A DNA stretch of 64,000 bases from Ascidiella aspersa. Its lineage: Eukaryota. Under the pieces are notes generated by a model. That model searched no databases. It saw only the letters and a program-made list of their open reading frames with translations, and had not been told where the DNA came from. This document shows, piece by piece, positions 53,451 to 64,000 of this stretch (its first letter is position 1; every line of letters starts with the position of its first letter). A program made the position numbers and the translations under genes. The DNA is taken from positions 12,896,001-12,960,000 of the forward strand of contig OZ004613.1 in NCBI GenBank assembly GCA_963924565.1. Reading direction: 5' to 3'.

Positions 53451-53489
53451 ATGGAAAGCAGCGCGCCATCGTCACTGCTCGCTCTTAGG
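53451..53489 (+). CDS. Pseudo-caspase gene, putative first coding exon
   Basis: ttcttattcaag|ttgctcgttATG...AGG|GTAATT encodes MESSAPSSLLALR. Phase 0 fits the next exon. The alternative start is the ATG at 57093. Confidence 0.5.
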
Positions 53490-56400
53490 GTAATTATTTT
53501 GTTTTTTTCGTTTCCTTAAACCTCATTTAAATTATATTTACGCAATTGAACATTTAGCTGTATCGTTTTATTAAATGTTTTATTTATTTGTTATGAACGT
53601 TTTGTAGATTATGATTTTGGAGGGGTTCATTTGACCGAACCATGTTATTATAAAATGTATATACCTAGTTATTAATTAGTGTTTCCAAAGCAAAAGGAAT
53701 TCATTTGTATTTTCAAAACTTTTACATATTTGGCCTTGTCGACCAAAATAAAAAGGAATTTTAAGTACGGGTAGTAGGGATGTTCAGATTTAACTTTTTT
53801 TTGAAAATTTATGCTTCCTGCTTGATTTCCCATTATGTGTCACATAAAAATCAGTTTCACAAGTTTTCAAAACAATTGGACAACATTTAGGGGCTCGGCA
53901 CCCCAAAGTTATCACACTAAAATTGCTAAAATCCGGGACTTCCCGTAACACGATACTGTACGTTTTTCTTTAAAAACAAAGAAACCTTGTAATTTTTATA
54001 TTAAACAATGGAAAGAAAGCATCACTAATCTATTTCCCAGTTTTATGTAACTTAAAAAGTATTCTTAAAGCCCCCAAAGCCCTACTTTACCCCATTTTTA
54101 GAGTTGTCATTTGATTTATCACATATATTCAATAAAATACATTTTATCGAATTATTTAAAACCTGTTTATGATCGCCTGTGATCTTCAACAGCCTGTAGC
54201 AAGCTTGCAAGTTGCTGAGGATTGTCATTTAAGCATAATCAGTGATTAATATTTTTAACAAACACATGGTCAGCATGATCATGGAACTTGTCCATAATCG
54301 CAGCTTTGTTTAAGACAAACAACGGCTCCATCAAAGCAGGTTATGACGCCTTAGAAACGGCATGCCTCAGGGATTAGTCCTGGCTCCTTTGCTGTTTAAT
54401 GTTTATTACAGTGATCTGCCCGCCACAGTCTCCAAGCATACGCTGATGACTTGGCGATCTTGCATGCTGAAGGGAATTGGCGCAGTGTTGAGAGGACTCT
54501 TAGTCCACCTCAATAACAAGGAAATTAAACGTGTGTTGTCCGTCAATACCAATGGAAGAACTTTTGGATTTCCATGTCTACATACCTCGCATTGCATCTG
54601 GACAGGACACTCACACCCCAGAGGAGCCACAATACCAAAGGGTACTATCCTCGAGATGCTCCTTTGTACCAGCTGCACTCAAATCACTGCAGAAATGTGA
54701 AAGCTCTGGTGTAGGTGAATGGATGGCCACCAAATGGAACGAGGAGCAATATTACCCCTCTCCACCACTATTGCCCCACCACCTCCAATAAGCCTTAGGG
54801 TTTTGGCCTGTCTATTCGAGCCTAGACTCGCCTTAACAGGCTGAGAACAGGGGTCGGTCGTGCTAGGTCTTCCATGAATAAATGGGGCTTCTGTGACTGT
54901 GGTTTGGAGGAACAGACTGCAGATCACATAGTCTCACGGTGCCGATATATCGCCAACCAAGTGGGACAAATGGTCTGACACTCTTGGACGATGAGACTAT
55001 TCGCTGGCATCTCGACTTCTGCCCGGACATTTGAACTGGAATAATAAGATCGTCCATACGAAAGAAGAAGACGATCAAGCAGGTGCAACGCACAGTACAA
55101 AGTGGATGGGACAAGTTTTCTATGGCCAGAAATGTTTATGTGGTCTGAACAGATGGGTAATGATGCTATTTTTCTAGACAAACTTGTCACATTTTCCTTG
55201 TTTAGTAATCACCCACAAATCACCAAGGACACAAAGGCAGCAATTGCCCGAAAACTTCTTGCAAACCTGAAGATTTTCACCAAGGCATTCAAGTTTTGCA
55301 TCATAAAATCAAAAGTTATACCACTTTAAAGGAGTTGATTGGCACAGATTCCTGCTTTATTTTACGCTACTCAATCAGATATGTGATTGGCCGACGCATT
55401 CTCCCGATTCATGGTGCTCATAATACAAACGAGTTAAGGTCTTCATGTACTGTTACAGTTGTGAATGATGCCGCAGAAAGAGGGGTTAAAAGTAAACACA
55501 GATTGTGCTGCTATATTAACCGACAATCCACAGCAACAAACAACTTGCTACAAGCTGTTGAAGATCACAGGCAATCATACCCAGATTTTCTAAAAAAAAC
55601 CTTGGCTAAAAAATAATAAAAGCTATTCATTGATGTTCCTTTTTACATTTTTTAACTATTACATTGGTATACTTTTGCTATATTCCTTCTTTATTCACTG
55701 TTGATTAAAATACTTTGCTTTTCATAATATACAATTTGTTAAAATATATTTTATTGTACATATTTGAATTAAATGACAGCTCCAAAAATGGGGTAAAGTG
55801 GGAATTTTGGGGCTTCAAGAATACATTTTAAGTTATATAAAACTGGAAAATAGATTAGTGATGCTTTCTTGCCATTGTTTAATATAAAAATTTCAAAGTT
55901 AAATCTGAACAACCCTAACGGGTAGGCCTACTTGTTTTAAAGACACTTGTTAAAAGAGCTAAAATTTGTCTAACAAACTTGCTAAACTTATAATTGTGTA
56001 TCTCACTTAGTGTGCACTGCGAAAGTGGGCTGCGCGTTATAGATTCACTCTCACGCCATCTTATGCAAAATTATTATATTTAGCCTAAAAAGGATTCTTG
56101 GCATTAGTACTTGGCGCTGCCCTTTTTTCACGACAGCAATCAGTCAAGTCAAAAATTTTTGCCAGTCATAACTTCTTGTGACGAGAACGTCCGATAGTTT
56201 GGAATTTAATACTGCGATCTACTGCGATCTATTTTGCTAAAAACCATAGTCGTTTGACGAAATGCCATATGATGCGCCATTATTAAAGTCGAAATGCCAA
56301 AAGTATTTGTTATAAATGCATAAAATCTAGTTGTGTTTAGATTTAGACCATTATTTCTTTGTAACGTTCAAGTGTTAAAGTTGCTATGGTATGAAAAAAT

Positions 56401-59400
56401 CGCGTTTTTATGCATAAAATTTATTTGCTCGCACACTACATGGCTTAAAGCCCAATTTTGGCTTGGTAAAATATATCGTCACCGATACCACCATAATAGG
56501 CTCGCGAGCCATATATGTGTTTTTTAAGACGCCATATGCCTCTTTTAATAAAGAATCTTTTCATCTCAGATAAATCTAAGCTATCGATTCTTAGCATGAT
56601 TTGAATAAAACCCCACGCAGCCACGGCCGCTTTACTAACATAATTTTTCCTTTTTAAACACACAAAAAGAAGTATTTTTTTGGCAATTCGCTGGAATCCC
56701 ATTTTTGTATTTTTGGGACTGTTATCCCGTTTAATGGAATCTCTTTATATCCAAAAGACCTTGCTTTTCCGACGGAGCTCCGTAATAAAAGTTGTGCAAA
56801 CATAGCTAGTTTAGTTTTTCGTGCTTAGTATGTGCTGTCTTTTAATGAGAACAAAATAAAGGGCCCTGTTCAAACTGCTATTTTTCCCAACCTATAACTA
56901 GATGTAAAAAAGTATTATATGTCTCTCATGAAAATACAACCAAGAATATTTGTATTTTTTGGCTCCCTTAGCTAAAGGTTCCCGACCCCTGGTATAGGGT
57001 ATCGGCTTTGATCCGACATTATCAGGCATCCCTAACAAAACCTTTCTCTTTACAACAAGCAGCCTGCCTCGAGGGTGAAGGTTCTGCGCGAGATGAGCGA
57101 GGAGGACATTAAGCTTCAGGCGCAGGAGTTCATCTACCGCCAGACTCTCGTCAAGGAGAAGAGCAAGGCGGGAAGACACGCGCTGGAGGAGGTGGGAAGA
57201 TCCTTGAACGCGATCGCGCAGCGCCGGAGGCAGTACTTCCTCGAGTACAAGAACTGCAACTCGATCCGCTGCGTGCGTCAGTGGTACGCCTGGGAAACAA
57301 AGGTATGGGCTGCTGTGGTGTAAACGAGAGCCTTGACGCGCTGTTTATATTTCGTCGTTCGGATATGTCCGCACCGAGGCGCCTTTGTTTTCACTTGCGT
57401 AGGCCGAAATGCCAACTCATGTCGGCGAGCGTTGGACGAACATGAAAATTTAGTAATTACGCAAAGGAACACAAATGGTTCAGGCTAGGCACATCGCCGT
57501 ATGGCTATTATAAAAAAGTGACGCGTTTTCAGTGATACCTAAGACTAAAATATTACGAGATTTCCACTGCCATGACAAGTTGCAAACTTTCGTTTTTTAC
57601 GGTGTCAATTTGAAAATGCCTATAGTTGCACTTTTGCCACTGCAATAACGCATAAAAGTCATAAAAACAAATTACGTGCAAACGTGCAAAAGGCTGTTAG
57701 ACATTTCTAAAATCCTAGGTTTACTTTCTACAGCTATACTGTTTTACTTACTATCCGATAAACTCATTTCAACCCATCAGAAAACATTTGGTGTGCAACG
57801 AGTCTAACGACTTTTATATATGCACGAGTCCTAGCAAATTCACTCTCCGTTAAATCAATAGCGCAATCTGGAAACCAACCCTTCCGAGGCACGAACTGAA
57901 AACGCAGCAACCAGAGGCATCCGGATGTTTCTTCACCGGATCGACTTCTTCGGAACCCTCCTGGCGCGATTCATAGAGTACATACTCCGGCCCCTGCAGA
58001 CGCAATTTTCGACCACAAATGGCGCCAACCCGGATCTGGAGGCCATCAAAGCGGAAATGAGGCAACTCAAGGTGGAAGATAGTTTTAAAAGACTTTTGTA
58101 AATGTTGCAAAAACCTTGGCCTAATTGCGGAAGATCGCATTATTGTTTTAAAAGTGAGCTTAGTTTAATGCACAATATAAGAAAAGTGTTTAAGCTGTCC
58201 AATTTTCACCGAACTGGTCAACTTTATTTACTGCATCTTAGTATAATTTCATGTTATACAACATCAGTTTTTGTAGTAGTAAAATCAGTAGCTTTTTGTA
58301 GTAGTAAAACCTGATGTTTTTTTTATTTCTTAGGTAAGACTAAACGAGTTATTTTTGTTATGTGATTGCGAAAAATGAAGCAACAATATTTAGAAAACGT
58401 TAAAACCCTTGTCTTTTCATGATCCCCAAAAAAAGAAAACATGCGAAGCTCTGCTGAGCGATAACACTGAAGTGATTCTGGACAATGTGAATCACATTGA
58501 AGCTGAGAAGCGATTTCCAGTCATCTCCATTCTTCCCAGGGTCCACGACACCCTCCACAGAATGGTTCAACTCTCGTTCCAATGGCGGATGCATGCTTGG
58601 TAGGGTTTAAAGGTTTCTCCTTAAAATTTCTTTTAAACAGAACTAATAAGGGCCATGATGAGTAATATTTTGAACCTGCATTTTGCTGAAAGTGCAGTAT
58701 TTGGTTCCCTTTCAATTTCGTACGTAAATCGAAGCAAAATAATACAAAATAAAAAAAGTTCCGTATATACAAATTATGCTTTACGCACAATATTTGGGTT
58801 AGGGTTAGCGTTTGGGTGTGTGTGGCTCAAGTATTATTATATGTATTATTATTAATAATGCTTATTATCGCCCAGCACACATGATTTAGATTTTTGCCTT
58901 TTTGCAAACACCGATGTTTATCTCATGAAATAGATGCGTTTTAAAGTTTAACGGTTATATTGTTAAGTAATAATTATTTTGCGCAGCTACGAACAGCAAT
59001 TCGAAGCAATCGAAAATCGCAGATCGTTGACCGAGACCGAGCGAGACCTAATGGAAAAAAGAAAAATCTTAAGAGGAATGGAACACAACATCAGGTGTGC
59101 TGGCTGCTGTGGCTCTACCTGTATTGGTTTACATGCACTGTCTTTGTATGTCTATTAACTATAGGCAGGGTTGCCATACCGTCCTTATTTATAAGACTTG
59201 TCCTTATTTTGAAGGGCTAGGTCTTAGAAAACTTATGTCCTTATTTCTAAGAAATGTCCTTATTTTCGAATTGCGTCCTTATTTTGTCTTGTTTTCAAAA
59301 CCTACAGAACCTCGATCGTTTTCCTCTGGTAACCAAAGTTGAATTATATTCTAAAATTGAGTTTATATGACATCATAAATGAAAATACTCCCGTCCCCGT

Positions 59401-62400
59401 GGCGTACAAGTCTCAGGTTTTACTTCTAAGTGGTGTGATAGCTAGGGCAGTGAGAATACAGTAACGACATTTTAGCAGTAAACGGCAGTTACTGCTGTTT
59501 AGGCTACAGCAGAATAGGGTGCGGCAAAGGCAACATTTTTTGCGTAGTGGTTGATAATGGGGAAATGGGTACAATGGATGCAACACTTCGATCGTGATCG
59601 ACCGTTTGATTGCCACATTTCACCTGGTCGATTGCGTGTCGGATTTTTAAAATAGCGTTCTTCAAGCAACATTAACAGGAATATAGACCGAAAAACAAAC
59701 CAATAAATTGCTGGAGCCGATAGTTTCTGGCAAAAAATATGGAATGTGATATGACATGGCTCGTACAAATACAATGCATGTCTAAAAACGTTTTTTAGAT
59801 GCAAATCTAATTTTCCGGTTGTCCTTATTTTTGGGTCCATGTCGATGGCAACCCTGACTATAGGGCTATATAAGTCCTCTTTCAAGAGGACTTGTGATTT
59901 CTTTTGAAGAAAAATGAATGGTCTTTCCGAGGCACTGAAAATGCGCAAATGTCCTCCTTTGTACATACTGCCTATTTTGCTTAAATTTTTACCAGAACTA
60001 AATTTTTACAAAAATTTACCAGAAATTTTTTTGACTTGTAGTTTTTGTCCGAATTACTTAAAACGATTTTACTGCTACAGTATAGGCTAAGCTTTTTTTC
60101 ATTAATTGTTCGTATTAAAATTTTCATAGAAAAATATATTTACCTGTTTTTGTCTTTTAGGCTGTTTCGTTGGCTGAATATAGGTATAATTAATTATCCA
60201 AAAAGAAGTATCAAGTAGAACACTATTAACAGATACTTCTTGTTCTCTTTTAGGGCTAAATTGTTCTATTTTTCCGCGATGTATATATGGTAGGGCTAAA
60301 AGGTCTGCCCATTAAAGGTAATTTTCTACCAACACATTGTTTCAATAATTTAGTGTCGTACAACATTATTGAATACCAGTAAAAACACTGGCCACTTAAA
60401 CCGTATAGTAAAATAGTTACTTGTTAGGGTAATCATATACTACGAAGTTTTTTCCCAAAATGAGGCTTAAAATATCAATAACAGGGAAACTTTTCAGCAA
60501 AACCACCAACTTCAATCGTTTTACAGTAGGCTATTTTGGTGCACATTCATTAGTTAAAAATTTTAAGAAATCCCAGCTCGAAATTAATCGCAAAACTTTC
60601 TGCTCATTTCCAGGCGCAGCAGACGAAGCCAGGAACTCCTAGAAGAAGAAGTGGCGAACAGGGAGCAGGCGATATCGTCGAGCAACTTCAGCCAGGTCTA
60701 TGTTGAGTGCACGGATCAGATCGAGGCGGTACGTCAAGCGTATGAACAGTGCAAGGCCAATCTTGACAACGCGGAGACCACCATTAAAACGTAAGGATGT
60801 GAAGTACAATTGCACCGTCGTGTAGTTGCTAGCTGACATTATAGGTTGTGTGTATACGTCATTAAACTATGTATTTCAAAATAGGCTCCAAGGACTTATT
60901 TAGTTTATTAGGAGCATCTGTGACATTTAAAAACCTTATTCAGTATTTTAGTTAAATATAAATTTTATATGTTAACTTTAATCGTGCGTATATCGAAATG
61001 TCTACTATTATAAGTTTTTTTATGATTCTATATCTGATTTTTATTTTTTGTTGATAATAAAGTTTGCAAAATACCATGAAGCTTTCCACTTTACCAAAAC
61101 CAGGTTTCATATTATATTTCTATTAGTCAATACGTTAATGTTTTAATCGTCAACTGACGGGTTCTACCTTTAGCCATCCGTTGACTTAAAGTATTTTCGT
61201 TAGTAAAATGGTGAATGTTGTTCAAGTGTTAAACTACAGGTCACAACTTAACCTTTATGTCTCTTTTCTGCTTGATAATAATCGACCGGATTTTTGGCTT
61301 GATTTTGAATAAATGTTACGATGAAAATATTCAACAAGTTTAATGATAAAAGCAATCGTATTGTTTTAAGCGTTCAACAGGGCTTTGGAAAATACAAAAT
61401 CGTTGGACAGAGACAAAAGAAGAAGTTGGAATCGAGCATGTTGCGACGAACGCGAAAGGCAGAGGAACTGGAAAAGATAAAAGCAGAACTTGATCGACTT
61501 GAGGTAAAAAGTTTGTCTATAGGTAGTGTACTGTGTGTAGCCTGTGATCAATTGCCAAAAGGTCTGCCAAGCTGGCAACCTTTCGCTAATTAACCCAACG
61601 AATTGACAGTAGGGTAGGTCTGTAGGAATTTTAATAGTAATCGTGTAGTAATATTTCCGGCATTATGAACCATTTGATTGGACTATCCTACACCTTTAGT
61701 CATCCGTTTGACTTATAGTATTTTCGTTAGTAAAATGGTAAATGTTGTTCAAATGTTAAACTATAGGTCCGAAATGTTATGTCCTTTTTCTGCTTGATAA
61801 TAAAAGAAGCATTTGATTGGACTATCCTACACTATTTTGTGATTTCTTTTTTTTAATATTAAAAAAATCTCCAAATGTGAAAGAAAAATAGTCATCAATA
61901 AAGTATTAGTGACAAGATGCGGTGCACTTCACACGAAACCTAACTTAATGTTTTGAGCCTGGCTAAAAACGTCACGTTGTCATTTGCAATTCTTCCAAAC
62001 AGAGCCGCAAGTTGAGATTGGACGAGGAGGAGATTTTTTGGCTAAGAGGAGGATACGAGAACGAGGTGAACATCATCGAATCGCTCCGGGAGCAATCCAG
62101 AGCATTGCAGAAGAACGTCATCGCACTTGAAAGGCAAAGAGATGACCTAAAGGCGTCGTACGAAAACTCAATGCAGCAGGTACAATTCTTTGACTAAATA
62201 TTCTCATGTTAAACCTATTAATATATTGCTAAAATATATTTTAATAAATTTGCTTTGTTGACATTATATTATAAAAAAACGCACCTGAATTCAACAGAAA
62301 TCTGAGTTTTTGATGAACGATTCAGGGCATATACTCGTAATGTGATGAATCGCGTTCAAATGTAAATTCCATCGTAGATTTGTGATTTGAGGACTGATAT

Positions 62401-64000
62401 TTTTAGTATGTTTAGTACATGATAGATTTAGACGCCAATGATGTAATAGTATGACATTGCAAGAAATCATTTTACATGAAACTTTATACGTTTTATATAA
62501 CATATTGGAGTTTTAAAGTCGCCCTTGTTTCAATTTGTTGGTTGTTAGCGTTGTTTCACATTCTTAAACATTAAGCTTTTTTTCTTTGTTTAGGTTTTTC
62601 GACTGGGAACGGATTACGATGATCTTATGCACAAATACGAATATGTTAAGCAGCTCGCAGCTGTTGTGGTCAAAACGTTGTGGCATAGTTCCTCTCCCAC
62701 CATACTGGTAAAGCCAAACAAGGTAATATACATTATACAGTAAGCGATTGCAGTAGTTGTAAGATTGCGACAAGTCGTCCGTTTTTCGACTAATTTTTAG
62801 CTGTGCACATTGTATTTAAGTTCTATAAAATAATTGATTCCGTACACAAACATAGCGAACGTCCTTTTTATTTTTCCGGTCGAAACATTGTGTGAAGGGT
62901 GTAGTATCGAGGATATCTTCGTTGTATTTGAAACACTTGCCACATTTTGCTTTTAAACCGATGTTGACTGTATGCCAATAGACAAATAGCAATTTAAGGG
63001 AAATCACAACCTTTTAAATTTGTTTTAAAAACGGTCACTTAACAGCGCACAATTGTCGACTTACAGATGGACGTCGATTCTCTGCGGGAACAGGGGACCT
63101 ACGACATGACGCAGCCCAAGGGTGTGGCCCTCCTCATTCACAACCAGTGGAAGAAGGCGGGGCGTGATAGGCCACACCTTGCAATCGGTGGCGGCAAGAA
63201 ATCAGGCCCCAGTGAACGCAAGAACGACCTCGGGCGACAACTGGAAACCCTCCTGGTCCAACTGGGCTTCTACGCCATCCGCAGATCGAACGTGAGCAGC
63301 TCGGGCATCCGTAACAACGTGTCGGGACTCTCGGACCAGTACCACGGCTACTCGGGCAATCACAACTCGATAGCGGTGGTGGTGGTGGCCAATTCGAACG
63401 AGCACGGGCAGATAATCGACAGCGACGGTAGCGTGGTATCAGTTGGTGCCTTGCTAAACCACTTTGCCGGCAGCCGCTGCCCGACGCTGATCGGCAAGCC
63501 TAAACTCTTTATCTTCCTGCTTAAAGTTACAGTCCGGAAACCGTCGCTGCCTATGGTGAGCGACATACACGGCGCCAAGAAGTCGACGCGTCTTTCTCTT
63601 GGATCCGATTTGCCTGTCTACTTTGAGCCTGAGCCGCTGACACTGGATGATGACTTCATAGTGGCGCGCGTTATGCACGAGGAAGACTCGCTGTCCGACG
63701 GCGGGCCCACGTTCGGCGGCGTTAGTAGCTCGTCGGCCGACGGGGAGATCCCCTGGTTCGCCAACACCTTAATGACGTCACTGGCCGACCAGGCCGGCGT
63801 CGCAGACGTGGCCGAAATCTTGGCCGGCGTAAAGCGAAAGTTTCGCGCGCACTACGCCACGCCGCGATCCGACCGCTCCGAGCAGTCCCGGCTAAGCAAG
63901 GATTCGAACCATTCACCTCTGGAATCCACGATGCTCCGTCCGTCCCCACGCGACGATCACGTAAACATGTTCGTGGATAGCTCGCTCAAGCGAAAGCTTT
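53451..64000 (+). CDS. Coiled-coil protein with a C-terminal catalytically inactive caspase (peptidase C14A) domain, 3'-partial, >770 aa
   Basis: Exons 53451-53489 (tentative), 57063-57302, 57862-58071, 58436-58599, 58987-59094, 60614-60790, 61371-61503, 62003-62179, 62594-62722 and 63067->64000. Phases 0,0,0,2,2,2,0,0,0 all match with no stop codon. The last exon carries caspase motifs YDMTQPKGVALLIHN, LGF, CPTLIGKPKLFIF, DDFIVA, PWFANTL and SSLKRKL. Confidence 0.88.
53775..55917 (+). mobile_element. Defective hAT-superfamily (hATm-like) DNA transposon with a transposase remnant
   Basis: TIRs TAGGGATGTTCAGATTTAACTTT / AAAGTTAAATCTGAACAACCCTA, plus a long subterminal inverted repeat (~53990-54150 vs ~55735-55892). 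Perfect 8-bp TSD ACGGGTAG. Frameshifted coding remnant at 55082-55616 (GATHSTKWM...; VVNDAAERGVK...LLQAVEDHRQSYP). The hATm subgroup call is from memory of these motifs. Confidence 0.85.
54255..55071 (+). mobile_element. Decayed, 5'-truncated non-LTR retrotransposon (I-group/Vingi-like) nested in the hAT element
   Basis: RT motifs RLRNGMPQGLVLAPLLFNVYYSDLP and frameshifted YADDLAIL. C-terminal LNRLRTGVGR...WGFCDCG..EQTADHIVSRC CCHC knuckle. 3' end CATACGAAAGAAGAAG. Stops and frameshifts are present. Confidence 0.82.
57063..57302 (+). CDS. Pseudo-caspase gene exon
   Basis: NAGNAG acceptor (57059/57062). PASRVKVLREMSEEDIKLQAQEF...RCVRQWYAWETK|GTATGG; high GC3. Confidence 0.85.
57862..58071 (+). 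CDS. Pseudo-caspase gene exon
   Basis: caatag|RNLETNPSEARTENAATRGIRMFLHRIDFFGTLLARFIEYILRPLQTQFSTTNGANPDLEAIKAEMRQLK|GTGGAA, 210 nt. Confidence 0.82.
58436..58599 (+). CDS. Pseudo-caspase gene exon
   Basis: KTCEALLSDNTEVILDNVNHIEAEKRFPVISILPRVHDTLHRMVQLSFQWRMHA(C)|GTAGGG. The acceptor is weak; an in-frame alternative AG lies at 58393. Confidence 0.78.
58987..59094 (+). CDS. Pseudo-caspase gene exon (coiled coil)
   Basis: ttttgcgcag|YEQQFEAIENRRSLTETERDLMEKRKILRGMEHNI(R)|GTGTGC. The frame differs from the one shown in the ORF track. Confidence 0.85.
59166..59856. mobile_element. hAT (Blackjack-like ends) MITE, 691 bp
   Basis: TIRs CAGGGTTGCCAT / ATGGCAACCCTG, perfect 8-bp TSD ACTATAGG, six GTCCTTATTT subterminal repeats. 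Confidence 0.92.
60614..60790 (+). CDS. Pseudo-caspase gene exon (coiled coil)
   Basis: catttccag|RSRRSQELLEEEVANREQAISSSNFSQVYVECTDQIEAVRQAYEQCKANLDNAETTIK(T)|GTAAGG. Confidence 0.88.
61165..61832. repeat. ~110-bp direct repeats on both sides of exon 61371-61503
   Basis: ~61165-61280 and ~61692-61803 share CATCCGTT..GACTTA.AGTATTTTCGTTAGTAAAATGGT.AATGTTGTTCAA.TGTTAAACTA.AGGTC...TTTTCTGCTTGATAATAA. CATTTGATTGGACTATCCTACAC occurs at both 61671 and 61810. Confidence 0.85.
61371..61503 (+). CDS. Pseudo-caspase gene exon (coiled coil)
   Basis: ttgttttaag|VQQGFGKYKIVGQRQKKKLESSMLRRTRKAEELEKIKAELDRLE|GTAAAA. Confidence 0.85.
62003..62179 (+). CDS. Pseudo-caspase gene exon (coiled coil)
   Basis: ttccaaacag|SRKLRLDEEEIFWLRGGYENEVNIIESLREQSRALQKNVIALERQRDDLKASYENSMQQ|GTACAA. 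Confidence 0.88.
62594..62722 (+). CDS. Pseudo-caspase gene exon (linker)
   Basis: tttctttgtttag|VFRLGTDYDDLMHKYEYVKQLAAVVVKTLWHSSSPTILVKPNK|GTAATA, 129 nt, phase 0-0. Confidence 0.8.
63067..64000 (+). CDS. Caspase-fold (p20+p10-like) exon, catalytically degenerate, truncated by the window end
   Basis: Starts ttacag|ATG and stays open for 311 codons to the window edge, so it is absent from the ORF track: MDVDSLREQGTYDMTQPKGVALLIHNQW...LETLLVQLGF...SIAVVVVANSNEHGQIIDSDG...LLNHFAGSRCPTLIGKPKLFIFLLKVT...DDFIVA...GEIPWFANTLMTSL...DVAEILAGVKRK...VDSSLKRKL. Confidence 0.92.
   Translation, partial: MDVDSLREQGTYDMTQPKGVALLIHNQWKKAGRDRPHLAIGGGKKSGPSERKNDLGRQLETLLVQLGFYAIRRSNVSSSGIRNNVSGLSDQYHGYSGNHNSIAVVVVANSNEHGQIIDSDGSVVSVGALLNHFAGSRCPTLIGKPKLFIFLLKVTVRKPSLPMVSDIHGAKKSTRLSLGSDLPVYFEPEPLTLDDDFIVARVMHEEDSLSDGGPTFGGVSSSSADGEIPWFANTLMTSLADQAGVADVAEILAGVKRKFRAHYATPRSDRSEQSRLSKDSNHSPLESTMLRPSPRDDHVNMFVDSSLKRKL

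What the first reader, a model, noticed from the sequence alone, without database searches (positions are those of the whole stretch)
53451..64000. Pseudo-caspase carried on a ~460-aa helical/coiled-coil stalk with no recognisable death-fold prodomain
Seen: ten phase-matched exons join a long helical region with E/K/R/Q-rich heptads to a caspase fold. The scaffold motifs are intact (YDM..PKGVALLIHN, LGF, CPTLIGKPKLFIF, DDFIVA, WFANTL, SSLKRKL). QACxG reads LLKVT (Cys to Lys, 63523-63525) and SHG reads ANS. Known: C14A caspases need the His/Cys dyad; long-prodomain caspases normally use CARD or DED; the best-known dead caspase, c-FLIP, keeps its DEDs and regulates caspase-8 by heterodimerising. 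Inference: the frame is intact with coding-like GC3, so this looks like a maintained non-proteolytic caspase regulator or scaffold that oligomerises through a coiled coil. I do not recognise this architecture, but I cannot verify that it is undescribed.
Basis: partly seen in the sequence, partly recalled or inferred. Interest (0 to 1): 0.85.

Follow-up and report, generated by a model that had tools for sequence, protein, structure and literature searches.

The report
Dead caspase on a helical stalk
This is a real, conserved sea-squirt gene for a caspase look-alike that has lost its cutting residues and carries a long all-helical front part instead of the usual death-fold domain; lancelets have the same gene with the cutting residues still present, and nobody seems to have studied the family.

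Summary

The catalytic His is Ser (63394-63396) and the catalytic Cys is Lys (63523-63525). The Gln and second Arg of the Asp pocket are also gone.

RNA reads from this species gave no coverage, so the exon joins rest on comparison. Annotated but "uncharacterized" proteins of Ciona, Clavelina and Styela have the same layout. So do three unnamed tunicate contigs, which also share the intron phase where I checked it. All tunicate copies are dead at the same positions and evolve under constraint.

New here: amphioxus has the same N-terminal region on a caspase domain that keeps His, Cys, Gln and Arg. The tunicate protein is therefore a pseudo-enzyme derived from a chordate caspase with a non-death-fold helical prodomain.

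The parts
53451..53489 (+).
   Evidence: ATG and a GT donor can be read in the sequence. The only support is a loose resemblance to the first 13 residues of the Ciona model P0095. The Clavelina model starts at the Met equal to 57093. No RNA reads.
57060..57092 (+). Possible coding extension of exon B upstream of the Met (QPASRVKVLRE), behind an AG acceptor at 57058-57059
   Evidence: The frame is open. The motif KV[LI]xE[MN] is shared with Ciona, L004 and L007. In L007 and Styela the Met position is Asn and the start lies further upstream.
57093..57302 (+). Exon B, 70 aa, the most conserved part of the protein (start of the N-terminal helical domain)
   Evidence: tblastn with Clavelina P0079 gives 84% identity; 88% to L004; donor GTATGG.
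57862..58071 (+). Exon C, 70 aa, helical domain
   Evidence: 67% identity to Clavelina; acceptor AATAG, donor GTGGAA, phase 0.
58436..58599 (+). Exon D, helical domain with the invariant motif FPVIS.L and WR.HA; ends in phase 2
   Evidence: The phase-2 intron sits at the same place in L004, L006 and L007.
58987..59094 (+). Exon E, start of the long-helix (coiled-coil-like) region
   Evidence: 56% identity to Clavelina; splice sites.
60614..60790 (+). Exon F, long helix
61371..61503 (+). Exon G, long helix, 55% charged residues
62003..62179 (+). Exon H, long helix with the conserved LDEEE..WLRGG[YF] motif
   Evidence: heptad test p = 0.004.
62594..62722 (+). Exon I, last helix and linker (..YEYVK..KPNK) to the caspase domain
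   Evidence: The Ciona savignyi fragment H2Y485 (P0006) runs across this exon into the caspase domain.
63067..64000 (+). Exon J, the caspase-like domain (317 aa). It continues 18 coding bases past the window end (to 64018), with the stop at 64019-64021
63394..63396 (+). Ser codon (TCG) on the column of the catalytic His (caspase-3 His121)
   Evidence: phmmer alignment to caspase-3; L-INS-i alignment; codon read.
63523..63525 (+). Lys codon (AAA) on the column of the catalytic Cys (caspase-3 Cys163)
   Evidence: Ungapped register from the KPK motif. It lies at the end of predicted strand 146-154. Other tunicates have K, R or H here.

Best explanation
One single-copy tunicate gene encodes a 753-aa (or slightly longer) non-proteolytic caspase homologue.

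Shown:
- The C-terminal 317 aa are homologous to C14A caspases and are predicted to take the caspase fold.
- They lack the catalytic His (Ser) and Cys (Lys), the Gln of the S1 pocket (Leu) and the second pocket Arg (Ser).
- The N-terminal ~436 aa are all-helical. In the Ciona orthologue's model they form a compact helical domain of about 180 aa, then five long helices of 38-72 residues that pack as antiparallel hairpins.
- Nothing in that region matches a CARD, DED, Death or PYRIN model.
- The whole architecture, and where checked the intron phase, is shared by ascidians of all three orders and by amphioxus.
- One amphioxus paralogue keeps the His, the Q-x-C motif and both pocket Arg residues.

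Inferred:
- The chordate ancestor had an active caspase with this helical, non-death-fold prodomain.
- The tunicate stem lineage lost catalysis but kept the protein under purifying selection.
- The protein now works by binding rather than cutting. The helical front part would be the assembly or localisation module. The dead caspase domain would be a protein-binding module, either pairing with itself or with an active caspase as c-FLIP does, or holding a ligand in the remodelled pocket.

My odds: it is one gene and a maintained pseudo-caspase, about 0.85. It acts specifically as a regulator of an active caspase, about 0.3.
For: Domain and fold:
- PF00656 scores above the curated cut-off on the exon.

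Lost residues: all four map to non-equivalent residues in the alignment, and the His and Cys columns also.

One gene:
- All exons are collinear with the Clavelina 742-aa protein.
- The Ciona 751-aa and Styela 797-aa proteins have the same N-terminal domain followed by PF00656, and amphioxus N-terminal regions match Clavelina's.
- The same exon order occurs in three unnamed tunicate contigs.
- The D/E intron has the same position and phase in the window and those three contigs.
- The ATG at the start of exon J is not conserved: L006 and L007 read ISLEK and ISHEK there.
- A Ciona savignyi model spans the junction.
- N-terminal homology between tunicate and amphioxus: phmmer E 2e-57.

Selection:
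- pN is 0.11-0.30 against pS 0.77-1.0 in every exon.
- None of about 25 polymorphic sites among three samples of a sister species falls in exons, which make up 18% of the length.
- The replacement residues are conserved: S-N/D-E-x-G, and [LFM]-[LM]-[KRH]-V-[TS].

Other:
- Single copy in this genome.
- The tunicate copies form one clade at 100/100 support.
- The helical architecture comes from a model with pLDDT 81 and pTM 0.66.
- No death-fold family appears at E up to 10 in any of 33 sequences.
Against: - There is no transcript evidence from this species. RNA run X4 put no reads on the exons, though only about 6% of the run was read and the tissue is unknown.
- The exon joins therefore rest on gene models and collinearity in other species.
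- The full-length structure was predicted for the Ciona orthologue, not for the window's own protein.
- No interaction was shown. The N-terminal homodimer test gave no verdict.
- Activity of the amphioxus orthologue is inferred from residues only; its motif is QTCME, not QACRG.
- One alignment method (L-INS-i) shifts the LLKVT motif by one column. That puts Leu on the Cys column and Lys on the next. No Cys is present under either register.
Confidence: 0.8

Rival explanations
1. A structural or cytoskeletal protein unrelated to caspase signalling. The first ~180 aa would be a divergent SPACA9-like domain (SPACA9 lines the lumen of ciliary and sperm-flagellar microtubules). With the long helices it would place the protein on microtubules or in cilia, and the dead caspase domain would serve only as a packing module.
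For: - The only local hhalign match to this genome's own SPACA9 exon 3 (VISVLP against IVSVLP) falls in the register implied by the end points of the structural alignment, an offset of 54.
- Both domains are encoded by three exons.
Against: - The hhalign probability is 0.4%.
- SPACA9 exons 1 and 2 align nowhere sensible.
- PF15120 hits the genome's true SPACA9 gene on another contig but not this gene.
- No family member hits PF15120 at E up to 10.
- A profile of exon D finds no SPACA9 chain in the PDB.
- The amphioxus orthologue keeps a full catalytic set, which points to a protease origin.
Confidence: 0.12
2. Two separate genes: a coiled-coil protein gene (exons B-I) and a single-exon caspase-like gene that starts at the ATG at 63067.
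For: - Exon J begins with ATG directly after its acceptor.
- Prokaryote-style gene callers report it as a stand-alone ORF in other tunicates (P0001, P0002, P0005).
- There is no RNA evidence in this species.
Against: - RefSeq and Ensembl models in Ciona intestinalis, C. savignyi, Clavelina, Styela and three Branchiostoma species join the two parts.
- The I/J junction is phase 0 to phase 0 with a good acceptor.
- The ATG is absent at the equivalent place in L006 and L007.
- In the search of the N-terminal domain, every protein that carries it also carries PF00656.
Confidence: 0.04
3. A decaying caspase pseudogene or annotation artefact with no function.
For: All catalytic residues are lost. No expression was detected in the one RNA run sampled.
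Against: - The frame of about 750 codons is intact here and in every other tunicate copy seen.
- pN is far below pS in every exon.
- No exonic polymorphism is seen in a sister species.
- The dead-site residues are conserved.
- The N-terminal exon is 84-88% identical across ascidians.
Confidence: 0.03
4. Still a hydrolase, using other residues. For example, the Ser on the His column and the basic residue on the Cys column could act as a Ser-Lys type pair.
For: Ser sits on the His column in 7 of 8 tunicate sequences, and a basic residue sits on the Cys column in all of them.
Against: - The basic residue varies among K, R and H, which a general base would not tolerate.
- One species has Ala instead of the Ser (P0002).
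- I know of no precedent in clan CD (my own knowledge).
- The S1 pocket residues are also replaced.
Confidence: 0.03

Closest known systems
c-FLIP(L) / CFLAR (vertebrate pseudo-caspase)
   Different: c-FLIP has two N-terminal DEDs and lies beside caspase-8, from which it arose. This protein has about 436 aa of helices with no DED match. It shares only 17% identity with c-FLIP. It belongs to a clade of its own with amphioxus proteins. Heterodimerisation is untested.
Unnamed chordate family: Ciona LOC104265773, Clavelina LOC143465426/-427/-308, Styela LOC120346786, Branchiostoma LOC118404675 and LOC109476238, with the divergent paralogue LOC109476237
   Same: Same N-terminal helical region, same caspase-type C-terminus ending K.LY.MPG, and same exon order. 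The window's gene is the orthologue in another ascidian.
   Different: The main amphioxus paralogue keeps AHG, QTC and the WR-type Arg, so it may be active. The tunicate members, and separately the second amphioxus paralogue, do not. All are labelled 'uncharacterized' in the databases, and no paper mentions their identifiers.
C. elegans CSP-2 and CSP-3, and Drosophila Strica (from my own knowledge, not tested here)
   Same: CSP-2B and CSP-3 are inactive caspase homologues that restrain CED-3. Strica is a caspase with a long prodomain that is neither CARD nor DED. Both show that dead caspases, and non-death-fold prodomains, exist outside vertebrates.
   Different: Neither has a helical or coiled-coil prodomain of this kind. 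No sequence relationship was seen in any search here.
SPACA9 (Pfam PF15120), a lumenal protein of ciliary and sperm doublet microtubules
   Same: The predicted fold of residues 32-211 of the Ciona orthologue superposes on nearly the whole solved SPACA9 chain. A short motif, [IV][VI]S[VI]LP, lies in the matching register.
   Different: There is no significant sequence or profile similarity. SPACA9 is a small stand-alone protein. This genome has its own SPACA9 gene elsewhere (C9:18025604-18028167).
CARD-coiled-coil proteins with the MALT1 paracaspase (CBM complexes)
   Different: There the coiled coil and the caspase fold sit on different proteins joined through death-fold domains, and MALT1 is an active protease. 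Here they are one chain, there is no death fold, and the domain is dead.

Membership tests
Caspase homologues (MEROPS C14A, Pfam PF00656) | Sequence match to the Peptidase_C14 model above the curated cut-off | tested here: met
   41.6 bits against a cut-off of 21.4, E 1.5e-10, on the window's exon J. Orthologues score 40-93 bits.
Caspase homologues (MEROPS C14A, Pfam PF00656) | Caspase alpha/beta fold (six-stranded sheet, p20 and p10 parts) | tested here: met
Active caspases (Cys-dependent, Asp-specific proteases) | Catalytic His-Cys dyad (SHG and QACxG) | tested here: not met
   His121 is replaced by Ser (63394-63396) and Cys163 by Lys (63523-63525). No Cys occurs anywhere between the KPK motif and the p10 part.
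Active caspases (Cys-dependent, Asp-specific proteases) | S1 pocket for Asp: Arg64, Gln161 and Arg207 in caspase-3 numbering | tested here: not met
   Gln161 is Leu and Arg207 is Ser in all tunicate rows. An R or K is kept near the Arg64 column, but the alignment of that loop is uncertain.
c-FLIP (CFLAR) | Tandem death effector domains ahead of the pseudo-caspase domain | tested here: not met
   No DED, CARD, Death or PYRIN hit at E up to 1 on the exons, nor at E up to 1-10 on the full-length orthologues. The model shows helices of 18-72 residues, not a 90-aa six-helix bundle.
c-FLIP (CFLAR) | Heterodimerises with an initiator caspase through the caspase-like domain | not tested
   No single-reference sequence of an active caspase from this genome was at hand, because such genes are multi-exon.
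Chordate helical-prodomain caspase family (unnamed) | Homologous N-terminal helical region of about 440 aa, followed by a caspase domain ending K.LY.MPG | tested here: met
   tblastn with Clavelina and amphioxus proteins matches the exons in order: all nine with Clavelina, seven of the nine with amphioxus. phmmer of N-terminal regions, tunicate against amphioxus, gives E 2e-57. The motifs QEFIYRQ, QRRRQY, FPV.S..P, WR.H, LRGG[YF] and PN[KR] are shared.
SPACA9 (PF15120) | Match to the SPACA9 profile | tested here: not met
   A PF15120 search of the whole genome hits only C9:18025604-18028167. No family member hits it at E up to 10. hhalign probabilities are 0.1-0.4%.
SPACA9 (PF15120) | Same helical-bundle fold | tested here: inconclusive
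   The homodimer job on residues 22-455 of the Ciona orthologue gave no verdict. The monomer model packs helices 191-446 as intramolecular antiparallel hairpins, for example 277-372 on prefoldin at rmsd 2.9 A.

The most novel reading that the evidence does not exclude
The helical N-terminal region is a new class of caspase prodomain, unrelated to the death fold and possibly derived from a SPACA9-like microtubule-binding module. It would have been present in the chordate ancestor on an active caspase that amphioxus still has. The enzyme would then have been turned into a pseudo-enzyme twice, once in the tunicate stem and once in a second amphioxus paralogue, and lost in vertebrates. That would mean a caspase activation or localisation mechanism outside the CARD/DED/PYD scheme.
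Probability: 0.4. Interest if true: 0.75.

Novelty: new variant of a known kind. Interest (0 to 1): 0.6.

Why it matters
Caspases are thought to be recruited and activated almost only through death-fold prodomains. The textbook pseudo-caspase, c-FLIP, keeps such domains.

Here a caspase lineage is conserved from amphioxus to all three ascidian orders, and its long prodomain is an unrelated helical assembly. The family holds both a probably active member (amphioxus) and dead members (tunicates). That gives a natural matched pair for asking what a caspase fold does once it stops cutting, and how a caspase can be controlled without a death fold.

Ciona can be manipulated genetically, so the question can be tested directly. 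If the SPACA9 resemblance is real, it would link a caspase-family protein to ciliary or flagellar microtubules.

Tried and rejected
- **RNA evidence.** The only RNA run of this species (X4) was laid on 57211-63210. 14 reads landed, all partial and all in intron repeats at 58611-60010, none on exons. About 6% of the run was read. This says nothing either way.
- **Homodimer of the helical region.** Ciona residues 22-455, two copies: no verdict, score 0.00, and my alignment was not used. It is neither for nor against binding.
- **Searches for relatives of the N-terminal region.**
  - ESM Atlas: no usable hit.
  - The search for homologous proteins with amphioxus residues 1-470: only itself, because the candidate list was swamped by coiled-coil words.
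  - With Ciona residues 24-222: only tunicate orthologues, all carrying PF00656.
  - phmmer of exons B and C against PDB sequences: nothing meaningful.
- **SPACA9 lead.**
  - PF15120 search of the genome.
  - hhalign of the family alignment against each of the genome's three SPACA9 exons.
  - Profile of exon D against the PDB.
  - Pfam at E up to 10 on all 33 sequences.
  - None reaches significance, so it stays a fold-level lead.
- **dN/dS.** Synonymous sites between the window and its closest relative are saturated (pS above 0.75), so no ratio can be given, only that pN is far below pS. For the overall figure I pooled the per-exon codon counts.
- **Alignments.** A2 and A3 misplaced exon fragments and were dropped in favour of A4.
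- **Foldseek on the full-length model.** It returned only caspases.
- **Literature.** Searches for the architecture, for pseudo-caspases and for the locus names found no description of this family.
- **Joined model left out.** All searches with window sequence were exon by exon, by reference. The full-length structure was predicted for the Ciona orthologue P0095 instead.
Full report
**What is there**

The window is G000:C7:12896001-12960000 of a 308-Mb eukaryotic assembly. It holds no N. By its homologues it is an ascidian (tunicate).

On the + strand the last exon (63067 to the window end) runs 18 more coding bases into the next stretch. It ends ...SSLKRKLYLMPGI followed by a stop. Its 317 aa match Pfam Peptidase_C14 at E 1.5e-10, 41.6 bits against a cut-off of 21.4, and caspase-3 and caspase-7 among solved structures.

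An AlphaFold2 model of this exon has pLDDT 72.7 and pTM 0.73, with six strands in caspase order. It superposes best on these:

**The dead site**

I take the register from the invariant GKPK.F strand, without gaps. QACRG then reads LLKVT, with Lys (AAA, 63523-63525) on the Cys163 column. SHG reads NSN, with Ser (63394-63396) on the His121 column.

A careful alignment with ten ordinary caspases adds two more losses. The pocket Gln161 is Leu and Arg207 is Ser. That alignment slides LLKVT by one column, but no Cys is present under either register.

The replacements are themselves conserved in eight tunicate sequences. The first motif is S-[ND]-E-x-G. The second is [LFM]-[LM]-[KRH]-V-[TS].

**The gene model**

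tblastn with the Clavelina lepadiformis protein XP_076819815.1 (742 aa) hits nine pieces in order:
- exon B, 57093-57302
- exon C, 57862-58071
- exon D, 58436-58599
- exon E, 58987-59094
- exon F, 60614-60790
- exon G, 61371-61503
- exon H, 62003-62179
- exon I, 62594-62722
- exon J, 63067 onward

Identity is 42-84% per exon. All eight introns are GT-AG, and the phases add up to 1308 + 951 coding bases, or 753 aa. Exon GC3 is 0.43-0.86 and intron GC is 0.28-0.40.

Clavelina starts at the Met equal to 57093. On the other hand the frame is open for 11 codons upstream of that Met, behind an AG. The motif KV[LI]xE is shared there with Ciona and two other species. In Styela and L007 the Met is replaced and the start lies further 5'.

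Every search used single exons by reference.

**Is it one gene?**

RNA from this species did not help. The single RNA run gave no exon coverage at the roughly 6% of the run that was read. The case therefore rests on comparison:
- Annotated proteins of Ciona intestinalis (LOC104265773, 751 aa) and Clavelina (three loci) match the family profile over their whole length.
- Styela clava (LOC120346786, 797 aa) carries the N-terminal domain together with PF00656.
- The N-terminal regions of the Branchiostoma proteins match Clavelina's.
- A Ciona savignyi Ensembl fragment runs from exon H through exon I into the caspase domain.
- In three unnamed tunicate contigs (L004, L006, L007) the helical exons lie in the same order upstream of the caspase exon. 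The phase-2 intron between D and E sits at the same codon.
- The ATG that opens exon J here is not conserved in L006 and L007.
- Every protein found with the N-terminal domain also carries PF00656.

The gene is single-copy in this genome.

**Selection**

Against the closest relative (L004) every exon has pN 0.11-0.30 and pS 0.77-1.0. Synonymous sites are saturated, so no ratio can be given.

Three samples of that relative differ at about 25 sites over 12.7 kb. None falls in the 18% that is exon.

The first exon is the best conserved part, at 84-88% identity. The caspase-like domain is the least conserved, at 41-58%. On a tree the seven tunicate caspase-like domains form one clade with 100/100 support, and the sampled ordinary caspases fall on one side of a branch at 89/89.

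**The amphioxus relatives**

The N-terminal region of Clavelina matches that of Branchiostoma LOC118404675 at phmmer E 2e-57. It matches a second, tandem paralogue (LOC109476237) at 2e-8.

The first paralogue keeps AHG, QTC, the Arg of the W-R-type motif (QDR) and an Arg near the Arg64 column. By its residues it could be an active Asp-directed caspase. The second paralogue has lost the Cys.

The simplest reading is an ancestral chordate caspase with this helical prodomain. Catalysis was then lost in the tunicate stem and, separately, in one amphioxus paralogue. No vertebrate or non-chordate member appeared in a HMMER scan of 1.84 billion representatives with the caspase exon. That is absence of a hit, not proof of absence.

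**The N-terminal region**

Pfam finds nothing significant on any exon or orthologue, including CARD, DED, Death and PYRIN. The Atlas finds nothing.

I predicted the full-length Ciona orthologue with an alignment of orthologues and exon fragments. The model has pLDDT 81 and pTM 0.66. Its helices are:
- 26-49, 51-70, 81-98, 108-141 and 150-170, forming a compact domain with pLDDT mostly above 90;
- 191-235, 239-276, 279-318, 326-370 and 375-446, five long helices.

The long helices match antiparallel hairpins: prefoldin over 277-372 at rmsd 2.9 A, and Smc, Rad50 and HlyD-type coiled coils with poor rmsd. In the monomer model the 'stalk' is therefore an intramolecular antiparallel coiled coil rather than an obvious parallel dimer. 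The homodimer job gave no verdict.

**The SPACA9 resemblance**

One short motif, VISVLP against IVSVLP, aligns in the register the structure implies. Every sequence-level test failed. I keep it as a lead at about one chance in four.

**How it most likely works**

What is shown is a maintained, single-chain, dead caspase fold behind a conserved helical module. The rest is inferred. The protein would act by binding. The helical module would assemble or localise it. The caspase-like domain would pair with itself or with an active caspase, as c-FLIP does, or would hold a ligand in its remodelled pocket, which is lined by the conserved S-N-E and basic residues.

The strongly conserved family motif LSDQYHGY.G.HNS, shared with amphioxus, marks a further candidate surface.

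**Novelty**

The sequences are in public databases, all labelled 'uncharacterized'. Full-text searches for the architecture, for pseudo-caspases and for the locus names found no paper on them.

I rate it a new variant of a known kind: a pseudo-caspase with a non-death-fold helical prodomain. An overlapping first-stage note in this scan (s1-788261) reads the same locus the same way.

Noticed in passing
They look like the remnant of a non-LTR retrotransposon.
   Followed up: no
window 59159-59863: A roughly 700-bp element in the E/F intron is bounded by 19-nt inverted repeats (CTATAGGCAGGGTTGCCAT / ATGGCAACCCTGACTATAG). It has GTCCTTATTT repeats inside and looks like a MITE-type DNA transposon. 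The only RNA reads laid on the locus (58611-60010, all partial) fall on this element and the intron stretch just upstream of it.
   Followed up: partly
window 61181-61281 and 61708-61803: The same roughly 120-bp repeat (62 nt at 94% identity plus 27 nt at 93%) sits in two neighbouring introns, F/G and G/H.
   Followed up: partly
G000:C9:18025604-18028167 (-), loci L010-L012: This genome has a true SPACA9 gene in three exons. PF15120 scores 64.8 bits on the last exon. It was used here only as a comparison sequence.
   Followed up: partly
Branchiostoma proteins P0085 and P0086; P0090 (1483 aa): The two amphioxus paralogues are tandem neighbours. One GenBank model (KAI8506017.1) fuses them into a single 1483-aa protein, probably an annotation merge.
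   Followed up: no
Clavelina lepadiformis LOC143465426, LOC143465427 and LOC143465308: Clavelina carries three near-identical loci of this gene on one 20-Mb scaffold, whereas the window's genome has one copy.
   Followed up: no
window 58598-58599 with 58987 (split codon at the D/E junction): The codon split by the D/E intron reads Cys (TG|C) here, Ser in L004, and Arg in L006, L007, Ciona and Clavelina. This is a variable residue at a conserved intron position.
   Followed up: yes
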